Shown here: one piece after another, positions 3,681-62,812 of the stretch | Layout: each line of letters begins with the position of its first letter | Numbering within the stretch: position 1 is the stretch's first letter | NCBI RefSeq assembly: GCF_001194135.2 | Contig: NC_068997.1 | Location: 38,456,054 to 38,519,010 of the forward strand | Reading direction: 5' to 3' | DNA length: 62,957 bases | Source: Octopus bimaculoides | Lineage: Eukaryota | Made by a program: the position numbers and the translations under genes | Notes under the pieces: model-generated | Told to the model about the DNA's origin: nothing | The model's input: the letters and a program-made list of their open reading frames with translations, nothing else | Database searches by the model: none

Positions 3681-4261
3681 AAGCTGGTTCGCACCGGGTG
3701 TCAAACTGCCGACATCATGACTGCTGCCCAATGCTCTGTGAACACTGTAAAGGCTGAAAAATGTGACATGGACAGCTGCAACAGAGACTACGAAGCCGTA
3801 GCCAGCAGGAAGAGACACAGCAGGCGTTAAGAAAATACAACGAAGGAGAGAGGGAAATATATTTGTAGAGAGAAAGACAGAGGTAAAGAGGTATACGTAA
3901 GAAAAGAGATGCTGGAAAACAAAATGTCACTAGAATACAAAGATGGTCGATGTGTGTGTGTGTGTGTGTATACAGAGAGAGAGAGAGAGAGGTGGGGGAC
4001 GAGAGCGGTTAGTGCTTGCTGTTTTATATAATGTGATGCGATTTAATAAGACAAATGTGAAAGAACGAGACAAGAATTGCTGAAAATAGAAAAGGGATAT
4101 TGAAAATAGGAAAGGAATATTAATTAGAAGTTTATTTGTATTTATGAGGTGAAACGATATATAAACACATTTATATGGTGAAAAGGTAAATAAGCATTCA
4201 TTATAAACACCATCTACAAGGTGCATTCCAGAATGTTTGAGACATTTTAATGAGAGATATT

Positions 4262-17192: not shown

Positions 17193-18888
17193 CTCCGTGA
17201 ATTATTGTGAATTATTGTGAATACTGTTGTGTTACTTTGTGAAAACTATGTGAATTACTGTAAGTTGTCTCTGTAAATAACTGTGATTCTTTGTGGAATT
17301 ATTGCTGTTACGTTTCACGCGAGCCGCTGCATTTTTTCCCCAGCTATGGCAAGTGGTAGTGTCACCAGTATGGAGAGCTACGCCAGGGTCAATGCGTCGA
17401 GGAAGCCAGTGCCGCTGGAAACCAAGTTGATCAAGTTGGATATGGAAGAGGTGAGCAGAAGCAGGAATTTGATAGAAGTAGAGGGAGACTCATACAAATT
17501 GTACCCCGCAAAAGAGACTAAAGAAGACAACATTCTGAGGACAGTTGTGTATCGTACACAAGCTGTCGAAACCTGTAAAATTGAAATAGTGACGGAAGAG
17601 GAAATCGAGGAATGCGTGGGTGAAATTGTGAATGAAGCCACGTACATCAACAGAGGAAGAAAGTTCGGTACGGTAGAGGTGAGGTTCACCACTATAGAAG
17701 AGGCAACCAAGCATGCGACCAACATTTTAAGAAGTACAAAAATAGCATTACTACCAAGTTATAGAGGAAGAAGTGTGAAAATACGTATTCCCAGAGTTAC
17801 ACCAGAAATTAAACCAGAGTGATTGGTTGCAACAGTGCTGCCTGCAACCAAGGAGGAGCCGGAATTGGGACCAGTGGCGAAATCAAAAGTGCGCAAATGG
17901 TGGGGATTTGGACTCGAAATGTGGCTTTTTGCCACATTCGAGGACATAGAAAGAATTTCCTACCAGATAGAAGTGGAGGATGAGAGAACGTTAAATGTTG
18001 TAGTCGAGGGAAGGAAACCAAATTGCTACATATGCGGGGAAAGAGGTCATATGAAGACCAAATGCCCCCTATATGAGTTCACACAGCCACAGCAAGAGAA
18101 AGCACAAGCAGAGGAAGAAAACATTGTAGACCACACTGAGGAAATGAAAGAGAGACAGAAGTGTGAAACAGAGAAAATAAGGAGAAGAACGAAAATGGAG
18201 CTACTAACCCTAAAAAGCGAAAGAAAAATAAGTCAAAGGAACGGTCAACAGAAAACATAAAAGGGATAGAAAAGCAAGAAACTAATAATGTACAAGAAGA
18301 GGAGGAAAGAACGGATAAAGATGTCCAATACAAGGGGGTTTTGATAAAGTACGAGAATTGCCAGCAGATGGAAAGGAAAGTCGAGAGGTTGGAGGAAATA
18401 ATAAGAGGGAAGATGCCAGAGAAATGTGCTGAGAAATGCATTTTGATACATGAGGAAAACTACTGGGAGTACATAAAAGAACTTGGTGAAAATATAACGA
18501 TAAGGGTATGGTTGGTGGAGACACCACCCCCTAGAACTGATTATTTGCACTTGATAAACACACAAGTAACAGTGGTTAATGGGAGAAAGGTAACACGAGT
18601 GTTTCAATTGTTTGGGTTGCAAAACAGTTAACATGTTTACATGATGTTTAACGTAAAAGTGAAAAACTGGATAAATGTAACCACCCGACTTCGGGGTTCG
18701 AGTGGACATTGCGCCTCATATTTTCATTCTTGCATATTGTCATTTTATTTTAATTTTTCTTCTACTATTATCATTTGTTTTTGTATTTTTAGTTCCCCGA
18801 TTTTATGTTTGTTGCGTTTTGTACCGTCTTTATGTTTTGCGATGTCTTAAACATTTTTTGTATAGCCCTTTATGGGTAATAAAGAAAT
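17193..18888 (+). mobile_element. ORF1-only non-LTR retroelement (HAL1-like, probably Tx1/L1-derived)
   Basis: Bounded by an 11-bp TSD; single gag-like ORF; ends ccctttatggg-t-AATAAA-gaaat (AATAAA at 18878-18883). No endonuclease or RT motifs and no room for an ORF2. Confidence 0.8.
17346..18631 (+). pseudogene. gag-like ORF1p with CCHC zinc knuckle (about 428 aa when reconstructed)
   Basis: ATG at 17346. One in-frame TGA (17820-17822, KPE*LVA, probably TGG). CYICGERGHMKTKC = CX2CX4HX4C at 18024-18065. One frameshift between 18167 and 18257. NLS-like PKKRKK. Stop at 18629-18631. Confidence 0.8.
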
Positions 18889-25699: not shown

Positions 25700-27860
25700 T
25701 GAACGAAAAATGGTAAACAGAAAGTTTGCCCGAAACCCACAAGATGTATATGGCAGTATGAAAGCGATGCCATCAAGGTTGTAAATGCTCCTCCCCGGGA
25801 AGACCTAGAGTCATTCTGGCGGAGAATGTGGAATATGAACAAACGCGATGCAGCATGGTTAAACGACCTACAAAGTGAGTACTGTGTAAACACCTCTCCC
25901 AAAACATATCAACAGGGAAACACTTCTGACAGGTATTATCAAACTGCCGAATAGAAAATCACCAGGAAGAGACCTGATAATAGGCTACTGGTACAAAAAG
26001 TTCATGTTCTACAGGGTAATTCTTCCGAACCCGATTAAAAAAACAATGGATGATGCGTTAGATTTACAACATTGGCTGATGGTCTCACGGACTACTCTTA
26101 TTCCCAAGAACAAAAAGACCTATGTGGCCAAAAACTATAGGCCCGTAGCGTGCCTAAATGTTATTATAAACTGTACACAGGATGTCTAAATATGTTTCTC
26201 CAAGACCACTGCCAAACAAGTGAAGTGATAAGCGATGAACAGGCAGGAAAGAAGAAAGGAGTCTGGGTCTGTGGTGAACGGTTCCTCCTCAACAAAGCTG
26301 TCCTTATGGAAGCCAAGCAACATCGCCGTAATCTCCTAACGATATGGCTAGACTGCAAGGTGTTTGATTCTGTGCCCCACTCATGGGTAATAGAATCACT
26401 ACACCTTGCCAAAGTACCATCTGGGTGTGGGCAATATAGATGTTTATATATGTACATCAACGGCTTGTCTATTTCCTTTATCTCTAATGATGAATACAAT
26501 AAATTCCTCGAAATCGACGAGAATGTTGCATACATTGTTACTGTGACTAATGTCAGAATAACAAAAATGTAGTTCTGTAGACTCCCGAAAATATGGAACT
26601 CAGAGCTGCCTGCATTCAACAAGACCATATCTCAAAATGCTTTTTCAGTACTAGTGCTAGTGCCAATATTTGTGATATTGGACAGGACATTCGATGAGAT
26701 ATGCAGCATGGACATCAAAACCAGAAGGGTACTGACTACCACTGGCAACTTCTACATTAACAGTGACCCGATATGATTTATGTGAGACGAATTGAAGGTA
26801 ATAGAGACATTAGATCAGTCCAAACTGCCTTTGAATATCGCATTATATCACCCATACAACTCTTGTTGAACAGTAAAGAAAGAAACGTGTATATTCTATG
26901 CATACTCAAAAGTGATTGCAACAATATCTTCAGAGTTAGAGAACTGTTGAGCAGGTACTCTGAAAATACAATTGTCTCATGCGACCCAAAGGAGGCTGGA
27001 TTGGCCTACCTAAACAGAAACTTCGAGAAGCATGCATCATACCAACAGAAAGCAATGCATATGTACATATCCCATAAGCTAGGGGGCAATTTCAACATTG
27101 GCAGGATGAGTAGATTCTCCTGAACCTGCGATAGATACAGTACATTCCGCCTAGAAGGATATGCCTTCGCTATCCAGGAACAGGATAGCTACTAAATACC
27201 TGATAAACAAGAGGGTAAAGGTGGTGCCCCCAAACCTCCATGTTGTGATAAAAAGAAAATCGGCTCTGCTATACCAGTGTGGAAGAAATCACCCCACTTC
27301 ATCAGCAGCTGCCCTGAAACGTCTCTGAGATACTATCTGTCCTTGAGGCATGATACAGTTGCGAAGATTATTTACAATGCTATCCACAGGAAGGACTGCC
27401 CCGATATTTACATCAAATGCATGTCAGAACCAGCAGGTATTCACATTTTTAAAACAAGGAATACTGGTAGAACACACCAATAAAAACATCAATTCGGTGC
27501 AAGCATAACAGACCTGATATTGTTCTGTGGGACAGGGAACAAGAGTCATGCGCTGTTGTAGAGGCCAGTTGCCCAGTAGATGTGAATGTACAATCAAAAG
27601 ACCAGGGAAAAGAGAACATTTATGGCGAATTAATGTAGAACTCACGACTCTTGTACCCTGACTATGAATTCTCATATGTACCTGTCATCATAGGTGCATT
27701 AGTTTATGTACCAACAAATTCGTAGAAAAATCTAGAAATATTCGGTTTTACAGAAAAAGAGCAAAACAAACTGATGCGGATTCTCCAAATCCAATCTGTT
27801 AGTGGCAAAGCAAAGATTTGTAGGACATACCAAAAATTCTTCATCCGAGATTCTTATGTG
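25700..27860 (+). mobile_element. RLE-type non-LTR retrotransposon remnant (R4/Dong- or NeSL-like)
   Basis: YWYKKF; RTTLIPK..KNYRPVACLN; EQAGKKKGVW; WLDCKVFDSVPHSW; LRHDTVAKIIY; KHNRPDIVLWDR..VEASCPVDVN (PD-(D/E)xK endonuclease); VPVIIGAL. Confidence 0.85.
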
Positions 27861-37859: not shown

Positions 37860-40175
37860 GAAAGCTACAATTCGGTCTTTGGTAGATCGGAAGTGGAGCG
37901 TACTACTCCATTATAGGCAGATATATACGCTTTGCACTTCGCTCAACTGTTTGGGACGGATGAAAAGTCGGAGACAGGGTTGAACTTTACCGTCAATGAC
38001 ATGAAAAGACGCTCAACTGGTGATGCAGAGTTTTGCGAAAGGCCGATAACAGCTGATGATATATTACGGGCAAGTGCCTGGCGGCCAATAATTCTCCTGC
38101 GCTCAGGTTTCAAGAATTTGGCCAAAGCGTTTGCCATAAGGTTGACGGTCTCTTTGGTTATGCGCAAACATGTACCACCCCACCCAGATCTATCCATAAA
38201 AAGCCTCCTCCTCGTGCAATATATCATAAAGAGGATTCATAAGGAACCTGACATGGATGGAGCCTCAGTCAACTTGGATCAATCGACAGCCTTCGATATG
38301 GTCGACTACCAATACTTGGCGACTGTTTTCAAGGCAACTGGTTTCGCTCCCGTCTTCAGAAGCTATAATGTACAGCGATATATCAACCGGTGGTCAGAGT
38401 AAATGGCCATCTGTTGGAACCGTTCAGCATCATGTATCCGTACGTACTGACTCTAGATCCACTTCTATAGAAGTTGAAGGTTTCGATGTGCATCCCACGA
38501 GAACTAGCATGCGGAAGATCTGTGTTTTCATATTGGATGATATCAGCATAAGCGTCGGACAGCAAACACCGCGTGGTGATCGACACTTCTCTAAGGGGAT
38601 ACGAGTCAGATGGAGTGTCTACATTACCACTCTCCCTTTCTCTTCACCGTGGTTGAGCAGAATGGAACACCTGCTCTTCTGCTTTCTGTGAAGAAAACAT
38701 GTCCCACTAATCGGACGCTCCATCTAGACACTTTTCCGCAGCTGTTCGATAATGCTCAAGTACTGCATGATCGCATGCAGCTCGGTTTCGTCGCTTTGCA
38801 TGTATCTTGGACGGGTGCGCTCGACGGCACTACCACATCTGCAGAATTTATCTCGAACTGACAGTATCCCCCACTCTACCCTAGTATCGCTATCACGACC
38901 AGAATTTCTGAAAATTATTCATGGGCTTCGGCCCGAAAGCACTTTGAAAAAAAAAACAGTCAGTTGTTTTTCATCAACGGCCAGATTTGCCTCGAGAATT
39001 TCGTTGCCCTTACACTTAATTGTTCTACAGAATACCATGGCGAAACATCCACCGATCGCAATAACCGACTGGCACTGCCATATATAACCGCCTGATCATT
39101 GTACCTTAACCCAGTTCACGTCTGCCAGTTCGCTTTCTGTGGAGGGGAGCGTTACACTAACGAGGCGCTCCTTTTGCTCTCAAAAGGAGGGGTGAACAGG
39201 TATGGTCACTATTAGTCAGAGATTCATTTTTTTCCACAGCTCGTCATTTTGACAGAGTTGTAGTCTTAGGTGAAGCAAGGGTCTAAACAGAGCGCTTGAC
39301 ATTCAGAATGTCGTCAAGCCCTCACAGCCTTCTACCAGTCAGTGAGGTCGGTAGAATTTTCACCATGACGTTCTATATAGAGTTAGTAATGGGAAAGACC
39401 TAAGATGTTCTGGGGAAGAATCTGTGCGTCGACATGAATCAACTGACTGATCCGTTTTGGGGGACTTTTTAGCTGGGAACCAAGGATAAATTGCAGAAAT
39501 CTCCGCCCTGGCAATGCTATCGGTGTAGGAGGTGGAGAAGCACAGCTGGTTCGAGGTAAACTGTACAGGCATAGAAGTACCGTCAACCAAGCCCGCCTGA
39601 GACTTGCTCAGAGCGACGAAACTGTTCTGCACGCACATTTCCAGTGCCCAAGTATTGCTGATTAGTAGAGTTATGTCGTAAATCTGCTATCTCGTGTATG
39701 TTGGATCCAGCTATCAACTGAGTCCGTTGCGAAGATAGCTCTGCGGCCTTCATTTGGCCGGGAAGACTAGGCAGTGTTTATGTATCTGATTGCCCGAAGC
39801 CAGATTGAAAGAGCTAAAAACAGACACCTCTTTGGCCAAGCCCCCATACACTTTTACAAGTTTCATTGGAAAAGGGAAGTGAGGATGTTGAAGGGTTGGT
39901 GAGAATGGTGAGCATGGTTCCGTGAGCATGGTTCCGTGAGCTAGCCTCCTCTGAGCTTGCGCCTGTAGATTAAGGGGAGACAACAAGAAGGCACGTGCCT
40001 TAGTGGTTAGGACGATCGCTATTTTGTGCGGTTTCCACAAGTAGCCCTAAGAAGTCCTGCTTTCTTGTAGAATTATTCTTTGCTGAAATGTATTGTTACT
40101 GTTCTTCCTCTTACACGCTCCTTTATATAATCCCACATTGTACCGTTTTGTACCGTCCCCATGCCTGTCGCTAAG
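37860..40175 (+). mobile_element. Tx1/L1-clade ORF2 remnant with internal deletions and 3' UTR
   Basis: WRPIILL..FKNLAKAFAIRL; NLDQSTAFDMVDYQYL; LDDISI (YADD-like); WQCYR; QSDETVLHAHFQCP (C-terminal Cys/His motif). Confidence 0.8.
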
Positions 40176-58270: not shown

Positions 58271-58461
58271 TTTGTGAACTACATTCCAACGATTAAGTTT
58301 TGTATCTTTGTTAGAAACCAGTTCTTTCCTTGCAGAAAGATTTCAAATAATAGAAAATAATAATAGATACTAAATGAGAATACATACATACATACATACA
58401 TACATACATACATACATACATACATACGTACATAAGAAATATATATAGTATATATATAGTA

Positions 58462-58770
58462 TAGTGGTTAGGGTATTCCACTCAGGATCGTAAGGTCATG
58501 AGCTCAAATCCCGGCTACGCGTTGTGTCCTTCAGCAAGACACTTTATTTCACGTTGCTCCAGTCCTGTCAGCTGGCAAAAATGAGTAGTACCTGTATTTC
58601 AAAAGGGCCAGCTTTGCCACATTCTGTGTCACGCTGAAACTCCCTGAGAACTACGTTAAGGGTACACATGTCTATGAAATGGTCAGCCACTTGCATGTTA
58701 ATTTAACGAGAAAGCTGTACCGTTGATCGTATCAGCTGGAACCCTTGTCGTCGTAACCGATGGAGTCCTC
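58462..58770 (+). mobile_element. SINE family C
   Basis: agtggttagggtattc..gagctcaaatcccgg..gtgtccttcagcaagacac; ends cgtaaccgatggagtcc. Confidence 0.85.
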
Positions 58771-59600
58771 CTGTATATATATATATATATATNNNNNNNN
58801 NNNNNNNNNNNNNNNNNNNNNNNNNNNNNNNNNNNNNNNNNNNNNNNNNNNNNNNNNNNNNNNNNNNNNNNNNNNNNNNNNNNNNNNNNNNNNNNNNNNN
58901 NNNNNNNNNNNNNNNNNNNNNNNNNNNNNNNNNNNNNNNNNNNNNNNNNNNNNNNNNNNNNNNNNNNNNNNNNNNNNNNNNNNNNNNNNNNNNNNNNNNN
59001 NNNNNNNNNNNNNNNNNNNNNNNNNNNNNNNNNNNNNNNNNNNNNNNNNNNNNNNNNNNNNNNNNNNNNNNNNNNNNNNNNNNNNNNNNNNNNNNNNNNN
59101 NNNNNNNNNNNNNNNNNNNNNNNNNNNNNNNNNNNNNNNNNNNNNNNNNNNNNNNNNNNNNNNNNNNNNNNNNNNNNNNNNNNNNNNNNNNNNNNNNNNN
59201 NNNNNNNNNNNNNNNNNNNNNNNNNNNNNNNNNNNNNNNNNNNNNNNNNNNNNNNNNNNNNNNNNNNNNNNNNNNNNNNNNNNNNNNNNNNNNNNNNNNN
59301 NNNNNNNNNNNNNNNNNNNNNNNNNNNNNNNNNNNNNNNNNNNNNNNNNNNNNNNNNNNNNNNNNNNNNNNNATATTAGGGAATAAAATTCCAAAACTCA
59401 CAAGGAAAATTCAATTTAGCAATTCTAAATCAAATTTCCCAATATATGATACATATATATAATTTAGAGAAAAACCCTCTATTAACAAATTCAACAATGA
59501 AAAATGTCATTCAAAACATCTAGAAAAACAAATATACCACAAAAATCCTATTGCAAAAATCAATAAATTACACAATCAATAAATGGCAAATAGCAATAAA

Positions 59601-59677
59601 TAGACTACGCGCGTTTCGTGGCTATATTTTAAAATAAATTCAATTCGATCTAGAAATATAGTCACTCTTCAGGTCTA
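59601..59677 (-). ncRNA. hammerhead ribozyme (type I)
   Basis: tagac CTGAAGA gtgactatattt...aaatatagccac GAAA cgcgc GTA gtcta. Stem I is 5 bp, stem II is 11/12 bp, and stem III is the palindrome ACGCGCGU. Confidence 0.88.
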
Positions 59678-60282
59678 AAATAATCATAAGTATAATAAAA
59701 ATAATAATAAAGTCAATGTACGTATCTAAACTTATAATAAATATCAAATAAATATAGAATAATACGTTTTAACAATAAATAATCGAAAATTATTTAGCAA
59801 CATTACTTGAAATAAAAACATAACTTATCTTATCGAAGAATTTCTGGTAAACTAAATTTTCAAACGTAATACTTAGCATTTATAAGAAATATATTGCGTG
59901 AAAATATGACGTAAATATAAAAATTATAGAATAAATAGATAGAATATGTATTTAAACTGTTAAAATAGTAAAATATATTTTAGCTGTGAGAATAAGAAAA
60001 AATTAACTGTAGTATACCATTTATGGAAAATTATAAAGTCTAAATAATTTAAAACTAAAATAGGTAATATACATAAGTTAAGCTAAATTTCTATAAATAT
60101 AATCTATTTTCATTAATTAATTTATTTGTTTTAAAAACTTCTTAGTTTAATATTATCATAAATATGTAATATGCCCTACATAATCTCGTGCTAATATACA
60201 CATTTAACTACTATAAGTTATATCTACAACAATTAGTAACATAAAATAGGGTTTATATATATACACAAATTAGCTGAAGTTA

Positions 60283-61833
60283 TAAAATAAGTAATTTAAC
60301 TTATGTCTACATTTAATTTTACGTTCATCTAGAGAATTTAAACAATTTTTTATTATTAGTTAATAATATCTCCTTAAATTCATTAGTACATAATAAACAA
60401 AAATTACTACCTATTCGATAAGATCATGCCTTATAAACTATCTCCCAATTTAAATTGTACTTAATATTTTTAGATTTTATATATATTTACTAAGGCCAGT
60501 AGAATTAATTAAACTTCTATTCTTAAAAGAATTCATGTGTTGCCACCAGTAATTTAATTTTCTTAGAAGTCGACCCTATGTAAATAGTATTTAAATTATA
60601 ACCATTCCTATTATTATCATCAATCAAAGTCACTACACATTTAAATACTACATCCTCCAAATTACATTCATTATTAAATTTACATTTAGTTTTATCTCTA
60701 CATGTACAATTAATTATATTCTGGTGTATATTATTACTATTATTATTATTGGAATAATTATTAGATTTATTTTTGTAAAACTTATTCAACTTAAATTTAT
60801 CAAAAGAAGAAATTATATTACCAACATTATTAGTAGTAGAATAACCAACTCCAAAATTATTATCAGAAAAAATGTTATTATATTTTTTATTATCTCTAAT
60901 GAAACCTTCAATTATATTTAAAATCTCTTTAATAATGTTTGTTTTAACTTGAACTCCATAATGAATAATTAACCAAATTTTGTTCTTATTATTTATATTA
61001 TTATATTTATTTTTTATATTATTAAATTTATTATTATCATTATATGAATTAAATTTAATCTTATTTTTAGTCTATTATTATTATATTTATGTTTTGTATT
61101 ATCATAATACTTATTATTAATACCATAATTACCTAAATAAAATTTATCATAATTCTTAATGTTAGGTTTATTATTATAAAAAATATAGGAATCATTTATA
61201 TTATAATCTTTTATATTATAATTATATTTAGAATTATTAAAGAATGTAATATTATTATTATATCCCGCCTTCCTCAGGGTGTCATTATAATAAGGTGCGT
61301 GTTTTTGGAAAATCTCAAAATTAGAAGAAAGCAACGATATTTTTTTACCTATGTTATCTGTCAACGATTTCTTATTTTTTTATTTTTTATTTCTCTAATA
61401 GGTTATCATATAATTCAACATCTAGTTTATACAGGTTCCTAGTTTTATCTGATTGTACTATAATTCCTTCCATATTTCGCATTTTTTTTATTCTAATAGC
61501 CAGATTTCTTAAATATCCATTATGTCTATTTGGGTATTTATGAAATTTAATATTTTTCCCCACCTTCCAAATATTACCCTCTAAAAGCTGTATATCCCTA
61601 TTATACGAGGGTTCCTTTCTAGATTTAAATTTTGAATTGATATAATTAGTATTCTCTACATCGTTAATATTAGATATGTTACAGTAATTGTAATAGGCTT
61701 TCCATTTAATCCTATTAATAAAATCTTTAATATTATTAATAAGTTTCAAAATATATCCTTTTCTAGACGGTATAGGAATATCCTTCAAAGCTGAGCGCCA
61801 AAATAGCGGTTCTATCTTACCTGTAAGTTCCAT
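60283..61833 (-). pseudogene. PLE ORF: N-terminal domain, thumb-side segment and GIY-YIG endonuclease, no RT palm
   Basis: LKDIPIPS..KLI..FINRIKWKA; SDKTRNLY; LSSNFEIF..APYYNDTLRKAGY; CTCRDKTKC..VVFKC..YIGST; TGLSKYI..WEIV; CRHK. No YxDD motif in any frame that I could find. Confidence 0.8.
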
Positions 61834-61887
61834 AACTAAGGAAATTAAGAGTTAAATACAATTGATAAACGTTAGTTATAAATAGAA

Positions 61888-61890
<3 letters not shown>

Positions 61891-61946
<56 letters not shown>
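61891..61946. repeat. (AAT)n microsatellite at the PLE 5' boundary
   Basis: Directly visible. Confidence 0.95.
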
Positions 61947-62772
61947 GGGAATAAAATTCCAAAGCCCGCGATATAAATTTATATATAAAATTCCAAAATC
62001 CGCGATAAAAATTTATATATATTAGCCAGAAAAATCTGCGATGTACTGAGGGCGCAGTATGGCGAGTGATTACTGTATTACAAAACAACGAGAATCAAAA
62101 TATTCATTCTTACCACGTTCCTTCTCACTGGGACAGTAAAATGACTCTTCGTTGAGAGTATTGTATCGGAGAACGACTTCTTATATATGGTGTGTAAACA
62201 ACACACGATGTGTGTACATAGACGTGGCATGAATGAATGAAACCAACAACAATTTAAAATTTTGATATATTTTATTTACTGATTGATAAGTGTTAACTTT
62301 ATGACTAAGATAATGAAGTCAGTTACGCATTTAAAACATCAGGGAACATTAAATGCAATATAATTGGAAGCTTTAACTGAATGACATCAAGAACTCTGAG
62401 ACATCAAATTGATATAAAGAGCAATGTATGTCTCTAACTATAAAACATAAACAAAAGCGGCGTGTCTACAGCGTGTCCTCTTAAACATTTTCATTTTCTC
62501 ATCAATTCATAATCTATTAAGTTTGTTTTTCTAAAGTAATTAAGAATTTTATATTGTTTTATATGTATGATTCGCTAGTTTCTTTTTTCATTTACCTGAA
62601 AACATTTACTTGAATAAATTCACCGTTAACTGGACTAATTGAAGAAAAACAAATTGTGATTTTTCACTTAGCATCACTTTAAGACATAATCAATTACAAT
62701 GTGAATAAAAGTTGATTGAAATATTTCTTATATACGTATGTATGTATGTATGTATGTATGTATGTATGTATG

Positions 62773-62812
<40 letters not shown>

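What the first reader, a model, noticed from the sequence alone, without database searches (positions are those of the whole stretch)
60283..61833. Penelope-like element that keeps its endonuclease frame but has lost reverse transcriptase
Seen: the N-terminal PLE block (..SDKTRNLYKLDVELYDNLLEK) is followed within about 25 nt by the post-RT block (SLTDNIGKKISLLSSNFEIF). An Asn-rich linker and a Cys-rich/GIY-YIG region follow, and 61071-60526 is stop-free for 182 codons despite very high AT content. Across the junction only a TAA and one extra base in an A-run break the frame. Known: autonomous PLEs encode RT and GIY-YIG in one ORF; the DKT variant and the CxCR-before-GIY-YIG layout resemble Naiad-type PLEs as I recall them. 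Inference: this may be a lineage that supplies its own endonuclease and ribozyme-processed RNA but borrows RT in trans, kept under coding constraint after the deletion, since the residual protein is strongly diverged yet mostly open. Caveats: the first GIY-YIG Tyr is Phe and the expected Arg reads Leu (KIKLLVATH), so this copy may be catalytically dead; other elements in this window also lost RT by apparent simple decay.
Basis: partly seen in the sequence, partly recalled or inferred. Interest (0 to 1): 0.85.

Follow-up and report, generated by a model that had tools for sequence, protein, structure and literature searches.

The report
Dead Penelope-like element missing its RT
This is one broken, internally deleted copy of an already described kind of jumping gene (a Hydra-clade Penelope-like retroelement); nothing shows that what is left of it is still used, so it is ordinary.

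Summary
On the minus strand, a PLE N-terminal block (61833-61390, ending SDKTRNLYK...LLEK) is followed 22 nt later by the block that normally lies after the reverse transcriptase (61373-61260). About 294 codons of RT core are missing relative to the closest full-length relative, P0001. The element belongs to the Hydra clade of Craig et al. 2021 (DKT, KWK/RWK, CxCX5C linker, C-terminal GIY-YIG), not to Naiad. It also has a probable type-I hammerhead ribozyme in its 3' UTR (59678-59600) and a 19-nt terminal repeat at both ends. The whole unit forms a 21% GC block (about 62021-59373).

The endonuclease frame is not kept: the 517-codon remnant carries 5 frameshifts and 2-3 premature stops. One frameshift sits exactly on the invariant GIY-YIG Arg codon, and 16 of 42 family-conserved C-terminal residues are lost. 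With that many lesions, a 182-codon open stretch is expected by chance (P about 0.3).

No second copy exists in the window, and none in the public protein collections is more than 46% identical. None of the 58 classifiable public relatives, nor any of 19 metagenomic loci, joins the N-terminus directly to the post-RT block.

Verdict: a single decayed, internally deleted Hydra-clade PLE. Whether the junction is multi-copy could not be tested without the source genome.

The parts
61941..62021 (-). Upstream 'tail': two tandem 34-nt units. The last ends in TTTGGAATTTTATTCCCTA, the same 19-mer that ends the element. It is preceded by a short TATATATA run (about 62012-62024).
   Evidence: TRF finds period 34, 2.1 copies, 91% matches. 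The 19-mer occurs exactly twice in the window, 0.05 expected by chance. The 21-mer ATCGCGGNNTTTGGAATTTTA also occurs twice. PLE insertions often carry a 30-40 bp tail at one end (PMC8557442).
61890..61946 (.). (ATA/ATT)19 microsatellite between the tail and the 5' end of the element body.
   Evidence: TRF: period 3, 19 copies, 100% matches.
61387..61833 (-). Intact 148-codon ORF encoding the PLE N-terminal domain. KWK (the family RWK motif) lies within 61713-61699, FKSRK at 61629-61615 and SDKTRN at 61452-61435. It ends in TAA at 61389-61387.
   Evidence: phmmer E = 2e-16 with 401 relatives. It aligns to P0001 residues 11-141. It keeps 14 of 20 strongly conserved columns.
61367..61390 (-). Deletion junction: the A-rich run GAGAAATAAAAAATAAAAAAATAAGAAATCG, with a TAA stop and a +1 frame change. 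About 294 codons (about 880 bp) of RT core are missing here.
   Evidence: The DKT-to-SNHP spacing is 302-313 aa in all but one (246 aa) of the full-length relatives, and the SNHP motif itself is gone here.
61260..61373 (-). Post-RT block KKSLTDNIGKKISLLSSNFEIFQKHAPYYNDTLRKAGY, in frame +1 relative to the N-terminal ORF.
   Evidence: It aligns to P0001 residues 436-475 and to P0122 KAIVKSVSSRISMLSSNIEIFSQHAPYYEIALRRAGY.
60986..61259 (-). Asn/Tyr-rich expansion made of degenerate tandem repeats with periods 9, 12, 15, 21 and 27. It contains one frameshift, somewhere in 61071-61014.
   Evidence: TRF, repeat family D1, GC 0.10 at 61000-61199, frame map.
60772..60981 (-). Conserved linker domain, decayed. 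It reads KIWLIIHYGVQVKTNII...GYSTTNN where relatives read WFNPPY..TNIGK...SYS.
   Evidence: Alignments. The NPP motif is lost.
60664..60708 (-). CxCX5C...C zinc-finger-like linker, CTCRDKTKCKFNNEC.
   Evidence: The motif is defined for the Hydra clade in PMC8557442. The four Cys are invariant in relatives.
60270..60651 (-). GIY-YIG endonuclease remnant. VVFKC has Tyr replaced by Phe. YIGST is kept. There is a frameshift on the Arg codon (leftover C at 60549), TAA at 60479-60477 in place of the family Trp, a frameshift near 60470, TGA at 60426-60424, and a frameshift near 60347-60352. The natural stop is at 60272-60270.
   Evidence: A model of the relatives' domain has I-TevI and T4 EndoII as its top PDB fold matches.
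59600..59678 (-). Probable type-I hammerhead ribozyme in the 3' UTR: UAGAC CUGAAGA G-[44-nt extended helix II]-C GAAA C GCGC G UA|GUCUA.
   Evidence: Rfam RF00163 matches the full model at 22.1 bits (gathering score 34), E = 0.0018 in a 121-nt search. My own descriptor gives 1 hit in the window and 0 in 300 shuffles. The MFE fold reproduces helices I and II. Relatives L009 and L018 have sense-strand hammerheads downstream of the ORF.
59373..59395 (-). 3' terminus of the element, TTTGGAATTTTATTCCCTA + ATAT, abutting the assembly gap 58793-59372. (TA)n follows the gap at 58772-58792.
   Evidence: The low-GC block (18-28%) ends here.

Best explanation
Window about 62021-59373 (minus strand) is one relic insertion of a Hydra-clade Penelope-like retroelement.

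Shown:
- It has the clade's N-terminal domain (KWK and DKT motifs), post-RT block, conserved linker, CxCX5C finger and C-terminal GIY-YIG domain.
- It has a hammerhead-like motif in the 3' UTR and a terminal 19-mer repeated upstream.
- About 880 bp (P0001 residues 142-435, the whole RT core) are missing at an A-rich junction.
- The remaining 517 codons carry 5 frameshifts and 2-3 premature stops, including loss of the catalytic Arg codon.

Inferred:
- The copy was laid down by target-primed reverse transcription into AT-rich simple sequence, using RT-EN protein from an intact relative or from its own parent.
- The RT segment was lost in one of two ways. Either it went during that copying (a template jump or slippage between Lys/A-rich stretches), or it was lost later as an ordinary genomic deletion.
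- Since then the copy has decayed neutrally. It now encodes neither RT nor a working endonuclease and is inert.
For: - Homology and deletion map.
- Clade motifs set against the published definition.
- Lesion map.
- The open run is not unusual given the lesion density, P = 0.28-0.38.
- Low retention of family-conserved residues (26/42 and 14/20, against about 0.9 in intact relatives).
- Period-3n tandem expansion inside the 'open' Asn-rich stretch.
- No other copy in the window.
- No relative above 46% identity among representatives of 15 billion proteins. All 58 relatives that a motif scan could classify, and every longer one read in full, continue from DKT into RT.
- 19 metagenomic Hydra-clade loci, none with this junction.
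- Boundaries from the terminal repeat and the GC block.
- Hammerhead.
- Internally deleted PLE copies are already documented, for example the 2.84-kb deletion in Chlamys-3_cRei (PMC8557442).
Against: - Only one copy could be examined, so the order of deletion and insertion is unknown. A multi-copy family with this junction cannot be excluded.
- The N-terminal ORF (148 codons) and two further stretches (116 and 182 codons) are open, and five of the lesions cluster in the last ~95 codons. This could mean decay has been uneven.
- Three frameshifts lie in or next to A/T runs. They would be artefacts if the assembly has homopolymer errors. The Arg-codon frameshift and the two in-frame stops would not.
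- The hammerhead scores below Rfam's gathering threshold.
Confidence: 0.8

Rival explanations
1. The copy belongs to an amplified non-autonomous family: an RT-deleted element mobilised in trans by an autonomous Hydra-clade PLE. It would need only its cis signals (5' end, hammerhead, 3' terminus), with no selection on the residual coding sequence. This is the PLE counterpart of R2 SIDEs or the Chlamys MRC1 element.
For: Both ends of the element look complete: the 5' UTR plus ATG, and the terminal 19-mer at the 3' end, which is repeated upstream as a tail. A hammerhead-like motif is retained. Non-autonomous or internally deleted derivatives are known for R2 (PMC3414825) and for Chlamys PLEs (PMC8557442).
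Against: There is no second copy in 63 kb. No RT-less relative appears among the public proteins or the 19 metagenomic loci. Those collections do not contain the source genome, so this evidence is weak.
Confidence: 0.12
2. One reading: an RT-less lineage kept under purifying selection because it supplies its own GIY-YIG endonuclease and borrows RT in trans.
For: There are long open stretches in 20% GC sequence. The CxCX5C Cys residues, YIG, CxxC and CxH are retained.
Against: The endonuclease domain has 3 frameshifts and 2 stops. The Arg codon is destroyed, the GIY Tyr is Phe, and the Trp in the conserved LSKYIW motif is a stop. The open run is expected by chance. Conserved-residue retention is the lowest of the C-terminal set. 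No intact RT-less protein exists among the relatives examined.
Confidence: 0.02
3. The junction is not a biological deletion. It is either an assembly join or collapse in an A-rich stretch, or the abutment of a 3'-truncated fragment and an independent 5'-truncated insertion of the same family.
For: The window is a gapped draft assembly with 12 N runs, most of them next to simple repeats. PLEs are typically 5'-truncated and form tandem or nested arrays that confuse short-read assemblies (PMC8557442). The junction is a low-complexity A run.
Against: There is no gap at the junction. Both halves match the same subclade best (P0001/P0122) and share the same unusual 18-28% GC.
Confidence: 0.08

Closest known systems
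Hydra-clade Penelope-like elements (Craig, Yushenova, Rodriguez & Arkhipova 2021, PMC8557442)
   Same: It shares the N-terminal domain with (R/K)WK and DKT, the post-RT block, the WFNPPY-type linker, the CxCX5C finger, a C-terminal GIY-YIG domain, a hammerhead in the 3' region, AT-rich simple-sequence flanks and a terminal tail.
   Different: The RT core (about 294 codons) is deleted and the remaining ORF is broken in 7-8 places. The 3' UTR is long (about 0.9 kb) and the hammerhead has a 44-nt helix II. GC is 21%. It is at most 46% identical to any public relative.
Internally deleted and non-autonomous PLE copies in Chlamys (the Chlamys-3_cRei copy with a 2.84-kb internal deletion; MRC1)
   Same: These are PLE copies that keep both ends but have lost the internal coding sequence. 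MRC1 shows that such derivatives can be mobilised in trans.
   Different: They belong to a different PLE clade, with an N-terminal endonuclease, in green algae. For the present copy neither transcription nor amplification is shown.
R2 SIDEs (short internally deleted elements; Eickbush & Eickbush 2012, PMC3414825)
   Same: The concept is the same: an internal deletion joins the 5' and 3' parts of a TPRT retroelement, a ribozyme is kept, and the derivative depends on the autonomous element.
   Different: SIDEs are non-LTR R2 elements with an HDV-like 5' ribozyme. They are multi-copy with TPRT-type junction variation. None of that is shown here.
Animal non-LTR retrozymes (Cervera & de la Pena 2020, cited in PMC8557442; Li, Clavereau & Pollet 2026 preprint, 10.64898/2026.07.22.740005)
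   Same: They are hammerhead-bearing non-autonomous derivatives related to PLE pLTRs.
   Different: Retrozymes are short, non-coding, tandem units flanked by hammerheads. Here there is one hammerhead and 1.5 kb of residual coding sequence.
Naiad PLEs
   Same: Both are PLEs with a GIY-YIG endonuclease and a Cys motif nearby.
   Different: Naiads have the endonuclease N-terminal to RT, DKA instead of DKT, and no canonical hammerhead. Each of these three features disagrees with this element.

Membership tests
Hydra-clade PLE | DKG motif modified to DKT in the N-terminal domain | tested here: met
   SDKTRN lies at 61452-61435. D, K and T are invariant in the alignment with relatives. The definition is in PMC8557442.
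Hydra-clade PLE | RWK motif in the N-terminal domain | tested here: met
   The window reads RIKWKAYY (61713-61699), that is KWK, where relatives read R(M/L)RW(K/R). The Trp is nearly invariant and is retained.
Hydra-clade PLE | RT core (RT1-7) between the N-terminal domain and the thumb/post-RT region | tested here: not met
   It is absent from this copy: P0001 residues 142-435 have no counterpart. This is the loss of a part by a family member, not evidence for a different family.
Hydra-clade PLE | Linker Zn-finger modified to CxCX5C | tested here: met
   C-T-C-RDKTK-C lies within 60708-60682. The matching Cys residues are invariant in 12 relatives.
Hydra-clade PLE | C-terminal GIY-YIG endonuclease | tested here: met
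   The window aligns to the relatives' C-terminal domain (tblastn 8e-20). A model of the relatives' domain (pLDDT 80) has I-TevI (probability 0.93, TM 0.62) and T4 EndoII as its top four PDB matches, although the E-values are only about 0.1. The profile search of PDB sequences was not significant. The window's copy is homologous but disabled.
Hydra-clade PLE | Canonical hammerhead ribozyme near the 3' end | tested here: inconclusive
   RF00163 matches the full model with every core nucleotide present, but at 22.1 bits against a gathering score of 34 because of a 44-nt helix II. It was not reported in the whole-window scans. My descriptor gives 1 hit against 0 in 300 shuffles.
Hydra-clade PLE | Insertion into (TA)n | tested here: inconclusive
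   On the 3' side the terminus abuts an assembly gap, with (TA)n on the far side (58772-58792). On the 5' side there is only a short TATATATA and an (ATT)19 tract.
Naiad PLE | GIY-YIG endonuclease N-terminal to RT, linked by a CxC domain; DKA motif; no canonical hammerhead | tested here: not met
   The endonuclease is C-terminal, the motif is DKT, and a hammerhead-like motif is present.
Autonomous PLE | Single intact ORF encoding RT and EN | tested here: not met
   RT is deleted, and the remnant has 5 frameshifts and 2-3 stops.
Non-autonomous PLE derivative (amplified family) | Several dispersed copies sharing the same deletion junction | not testable with these tools
   The source genome is not in any searchable collection: exact-ORF look-ups failed and no relative is more than 46% identical. 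No second copy is in the window.
Non-LTR retrozyme | Short non-coding unit in tandem, bounded by hammerheads | tested here: not met
   There is one hammerhead-like motif in the whole window, and the unit carries 1.5 kb of coding remnant.

The most novel reading that the evidence does not exclude
The RT-deleted structure is the master form of a dispersed non-autonomous Hydra-clade PLE family. It would keep the 5' end, N-terminal domain, endonuclease region, hammerhead and 3' terminus, and would be copied in trans by an autonomous relative. This locus would be an old, decayed member. That would be the first coding-remnant non-autonomous derivative described for C-terminal-EN PLEs, intermediate between full elements and retrozymes.
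Probability: 0.1. Interest if true: 0.5.

Novelty: new member of a known kind. Interest (0 to 1): 0.15.

Why it matters
As it stands it matters little. It adds one decayed, AT-rich, divergent member to the Hydra clade of PLEs, and shows that such relics can lose the RT core by a clean internal deletion. That is already known for other PLEs.

It would matter moderately if the same junction proved to be multi-copy. PLE non-autonomous derivatives are so far known as non-coding retrozymes or 3'-end-sharing elements. A deletion derivative with both termini and a hammerhead would help define the cis requirements of PLE retrotransposition.

Tried and rejected
- Pfam recognises neither the window's pieces nor intact Hydra-clade proteins.
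- The first homologue search, with the full conceptual protein, was swamped by Asn-rich words and gave 4 hits. The cleaned query gave only two RT-containing fragments.
- Rfam found no hammerhead at the gathering threshold, nor at E <= 10 over 4.5 kb. It appeared only in a 121-nt search made after a regex lead, so that E-value is partly post hoc.
- The single-strand fold energy of the hammerhead region is no better than shuffles, z = 0.47.
- The local alignment of the upstream flank against the 3' UTR is not significant beyond the terminal 19-22 nt: score 74 against 56 +/- 8 for shuffles. There is therefore no long pLTR.
- L001, the closest full-length relative, shows no DNA similarity to the window and no hammerhead in its 316-nt 3' flank.
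- Exact look-ups of the window's ORFs found nothing.
- The metagenome scan with the single protein found nothing. The scan with an alignment found 19 loci, none with the junction.
- The PDB sequence-profile search for the endonuclease domain was not significant.
- The first MAFFT global alignment smeared the post-RT block across the RT region and was replaced by split alignments.
- The host species could not be identified. A mollusc or cephalopod-like draft assembly is only an impression.

Full report
**The observation**

- An intact 148-codon ORF runs 61833-61387, from ATG to TAA, and ends ...IIVQSDKTRNLYKLDVELYDNLLEK.
- Twenty-two nucleotides further on, in the next frame, comes KKSLTDNIGKKISLLSSNFEIFQKHAPYYNDTLRKAGY (61373-61260).
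- An Asn/Tyr-rich stretch follows.
- After that, 61071-60526 is open for 182 codons. It contains CTCRDKTKCKFNNEC (60708-60664), VVFKC (60651-60637) and YIGST (60582-60568).

**Homology and the size of the deletion**

The N-terminal ORF finds 401 proteins at E <= 1e-3 in an exhaustive HMMER search of 1.84 billion cluster representatives. The best E-value is 2e-16 and identities range from 24 to 46%.

The closest full-length relative from the word-indexed search is P0001. It has 803 aa and lies on a 2842-bp Logan contig, L001. tblastn of P0001 against the region gives three matches:
- residues 11-141 to the N-terminal ORF (5e-19);
- residues 436-512 to the post-RT block (1e-7);
- residues 597-792 to the C-terminal part (8e-20).

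Residues 142-435 have no counterpart in the window. In all but one (246 aa) of the full-length relatives, the DKT motif and the SNHP motif that closes the RT region are 302-313 residues apart. Here SNHP itself is gone. About 294 codons (about 880 bp), the entire RT core, are therefore missing.

The junction is GAGAAATAAAAAATAAAAAAATAAGAAATCG. The relatives have Lys-rich sequence (KEIHKSYKKV, TKAIVKS) at the corresponding points.

**Which PLE it is**

Craig et al. 2021 (PMC8557442) define the Hydra clade by the following features:
- an RWK motif;
- DKG changed to DKT;
- a linker finger changed to CxCX5C;
- a C-terminal GIY-YIG domain without CCHH;
- canonical hammerheads;
- (TA)n targets.

They state that Naiads have an N-terminal endonuclease, DKA, and no canonical hammerhead.

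Pfam does not recognise these proteins at all. As an independent check of the nuclease fold, I modelled the endonuclease domain of relatives P0001-P0006 (pLDDT 80). The top four PDB fold matches are the GIY-YIG enzymes I-TevI and T4 EndoII (probability up to 0.93, TM 0.62, E about 0.1). A PDB sequence-profile search was not significant.

**Extent of the element**

- GC is 18-28% from 59373 to about 62000. The window as a whole is 36%, and 62000-62199 is 38%.
- The 19-mer TTTGGAATTTTATTCCCTA occurs exactly twice in the window, on the minus strand, at 61963-61945 and 59395-59377. Chance predicts 0.05 occurrences even with three mismatches allowed.
- The upstream copy ends a pair of 34-nt tandem units (61951-62021) and is followed by (ATT)19 and then the 5' UTR.
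- The downstream copy abuts the assembly gap 58793-59372, beyond which lies (TA)n.
- This matches the short 'tail' that PLE insertions often carry at one end. There is no long pLTR: the rest of the upstream flank does not align with the 3' UTR.

**The hammerhead**

Rfam found nothing at the gathering threshold, nor at E <= 10 over 4.5 kb. A regex for the hammerhead core found one candidate, on the coding strand: UAGAC-CUGAAGA-G[helix II, 44 nt]C-GAAA-C-GCGC-G-UA|GUCUA, at 59677-59601.

- A stricter descriptor requires helix I of at least 4 bp, helix II of at least 5 bp with one mismatch allowed, A15.1-U16.1 plus a short helix III, and a non-G at position 17. It finds this site and no other in the window, and none in 300 block shuffles.
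- In a 121-nt search, Rfam Hammerhead_1 matches its whole model at 22.1 bits (gathering score 34) with E = 0.0018. The penalty comes from the long helix II. That E-value is partly post hoc.
- The same descriptor finds sense-strand hammerheads about 60-130 nt after the ORF in two metagenomic relatives, L009 and L018.

I call it a probable hammerhead, possibly degenerate.

**Is the remnant under constraint?**

Following the homology through the frames gives these lesions:
- TAA plus a +1 shift at the junction;
- a shift inside the Asn-rich repeats (61071-61014);
- a shift at 60549, where AAA TTA C|TGG TGG leaves one base in place of the family's invariant Arg codon (FKxR(W/F)YxH reads IKL-WWQH);
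- TAA at 60479-60477, where relatives have the Trp of LSKYIW;
- a shift near 60470;
- TGA at 60426-60424;
- a shift near 60350;
- then the natural stop at 60272-60270.

That makes 5 frameshifts and 2-3 stops in 517 codons, five of them within the GIY-YIG domain. The endonuclease frame is not kept.

With 7-8 lesions placed at random, the longest lesion-free run is at least 182 codons in 28-38% of simulations. Part of the open stretch is a degenerate tandem expansion with periods 9, 12, 21 and 27, which preserves the frame without selection.

At columns where intact relatives agree at 90% or more, the window keeps 14 of 20 N-terminal residues and 26 of 42 C-terminal residues. Relatives keep 0.68-1.00 and 0.78-0.95 respectively, with medians near 0.9. 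Losses include NPP of WFNPPY, the Pro of the zinc finger and the GIY Tyr. All of this points to relaxed constraint.

**Other copies and RT-less relatives**

- The window holds no second copy, at either the DNA or the protein level.
- The exact ORFs are not on record in the public assemblies or protein clusters.
- No protein in the representative library is more than 46% identical. The source genome is therefore effectively absent from what I could search.
- A motif scan of the retrieved relatives picked out 74 with a DKT/DKS match and at least 75 residues after it. Of these, 58 reach the KDHK motif of RT. In the other 16 the regex either hit a different DKT or the protein breaks off or degenerates before the KDHK motif. 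None jumps to the post-RT block.
- A degenerate-pattern scan of JGI metagenomes returned 19 Hydra-clade loci. They are full-length copies, contig-truncated copies or partial tandems, and none has this junction.

**Conclusion**

The best-supported reading (confidence about 0.8) is a single dead insertion of a Hydra-clade PLE. It lost its RT core by one internal deletion, either during TPRT or afterwards, and has since decayed.

Internally deleted and non-autonomous PLE copies are documented (Chlamys-3_cRei and MRC1). The general route from internal deletion to a trans-mobilised element is known from R2 SIDEs, and PLE-derived retrozymes are also known.

The rivals are as follows:
- the copy belongs to an amplified RT-less non-autonomous family (about 0.1);
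- the junction is an assembly or nested-insertion artefact (about 0.08);

Novelty: a new, divergent member of a known kind. Interest is low.

Noticed in passing
L008:2636-2682 and L008:2917-2963: A marine-metagenome Hydra-clade PLE locus carries two identical hammerheads that reach Rfam's gathering score (35.9 bits). They are 281 nt apart and lie on the strand opposite to the complete ORF (241-2322). This could be an inverted pLTR or a retrozyme-like tandem unit next to the element.
   Followed up: no
L011:179-879: Another Hydra-clade copy has a smaller internal deletion. Residues about 149-215 of P0140 are missing with no gap in the DNA, and the deletion starts only about 10 residues after the point where the window's deletion starts. 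No close full-length relative was available to inspect the breakpoints.
   Followed up: partly
L009 and L010: These loci show the partial tandem and inverted arrangements typical of PLEs. In L009 an upstream 3' fragment (P0140 residues 517-702) and a hammerhead at 4023-4073 precede a new copy starting at 4241, with an inverted copy at 3131-1244.
   Followed up: partly
window 59373-62000: The element is a sharply bounded 18-28% GC block in a 36% GC window. Its closest relative P0001 also has a long Asn-rich insert at the same linker position, although its contig is 34% GC. The origin of the extreme AT content is unexplained: either the family's own composition or decay.
   Followed up: partly
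window 58793-59372 and 11 other N runs: The window has twelve assembly gaps (3622 N in all). Most are flanked by (TA)n, (CA)n or similar simple repeats. The gap at the element's 3' end may hide more of the insertion or its target microsatellite.
   Followed up: no
window 58460-58760 (minus strand): A GC-richer stretch just beyond the gap looks to me like a tRNA-derived SINE. It ends ...gccgggatttgagctcatgaccttacgatcc... and is flanked by (TACA)n/(TA)n. It was not tested, and no Rfam hit reached the threshold.
   Followed up: no
window 17823-18257 (+), 26150-26569 (+), 37932-38399 (+): Other retroelement fragments are present: a CCHC zinc-knuckle ORF (Pfam zf-CCHC, 24 bits) and two weak RVT_1 fragments below the gathering score. 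None is related to the Hydra-clade element.
   Followed up: partly
window 62724-62811: The (TACA)n/(TA)n microsatellite gives spurious sub-threshold Rfam hits to microRNA families (mir-297 at 54.8 bits against a gathering score of 90). This is a simple-repeat artefact.
   Followed up: yes
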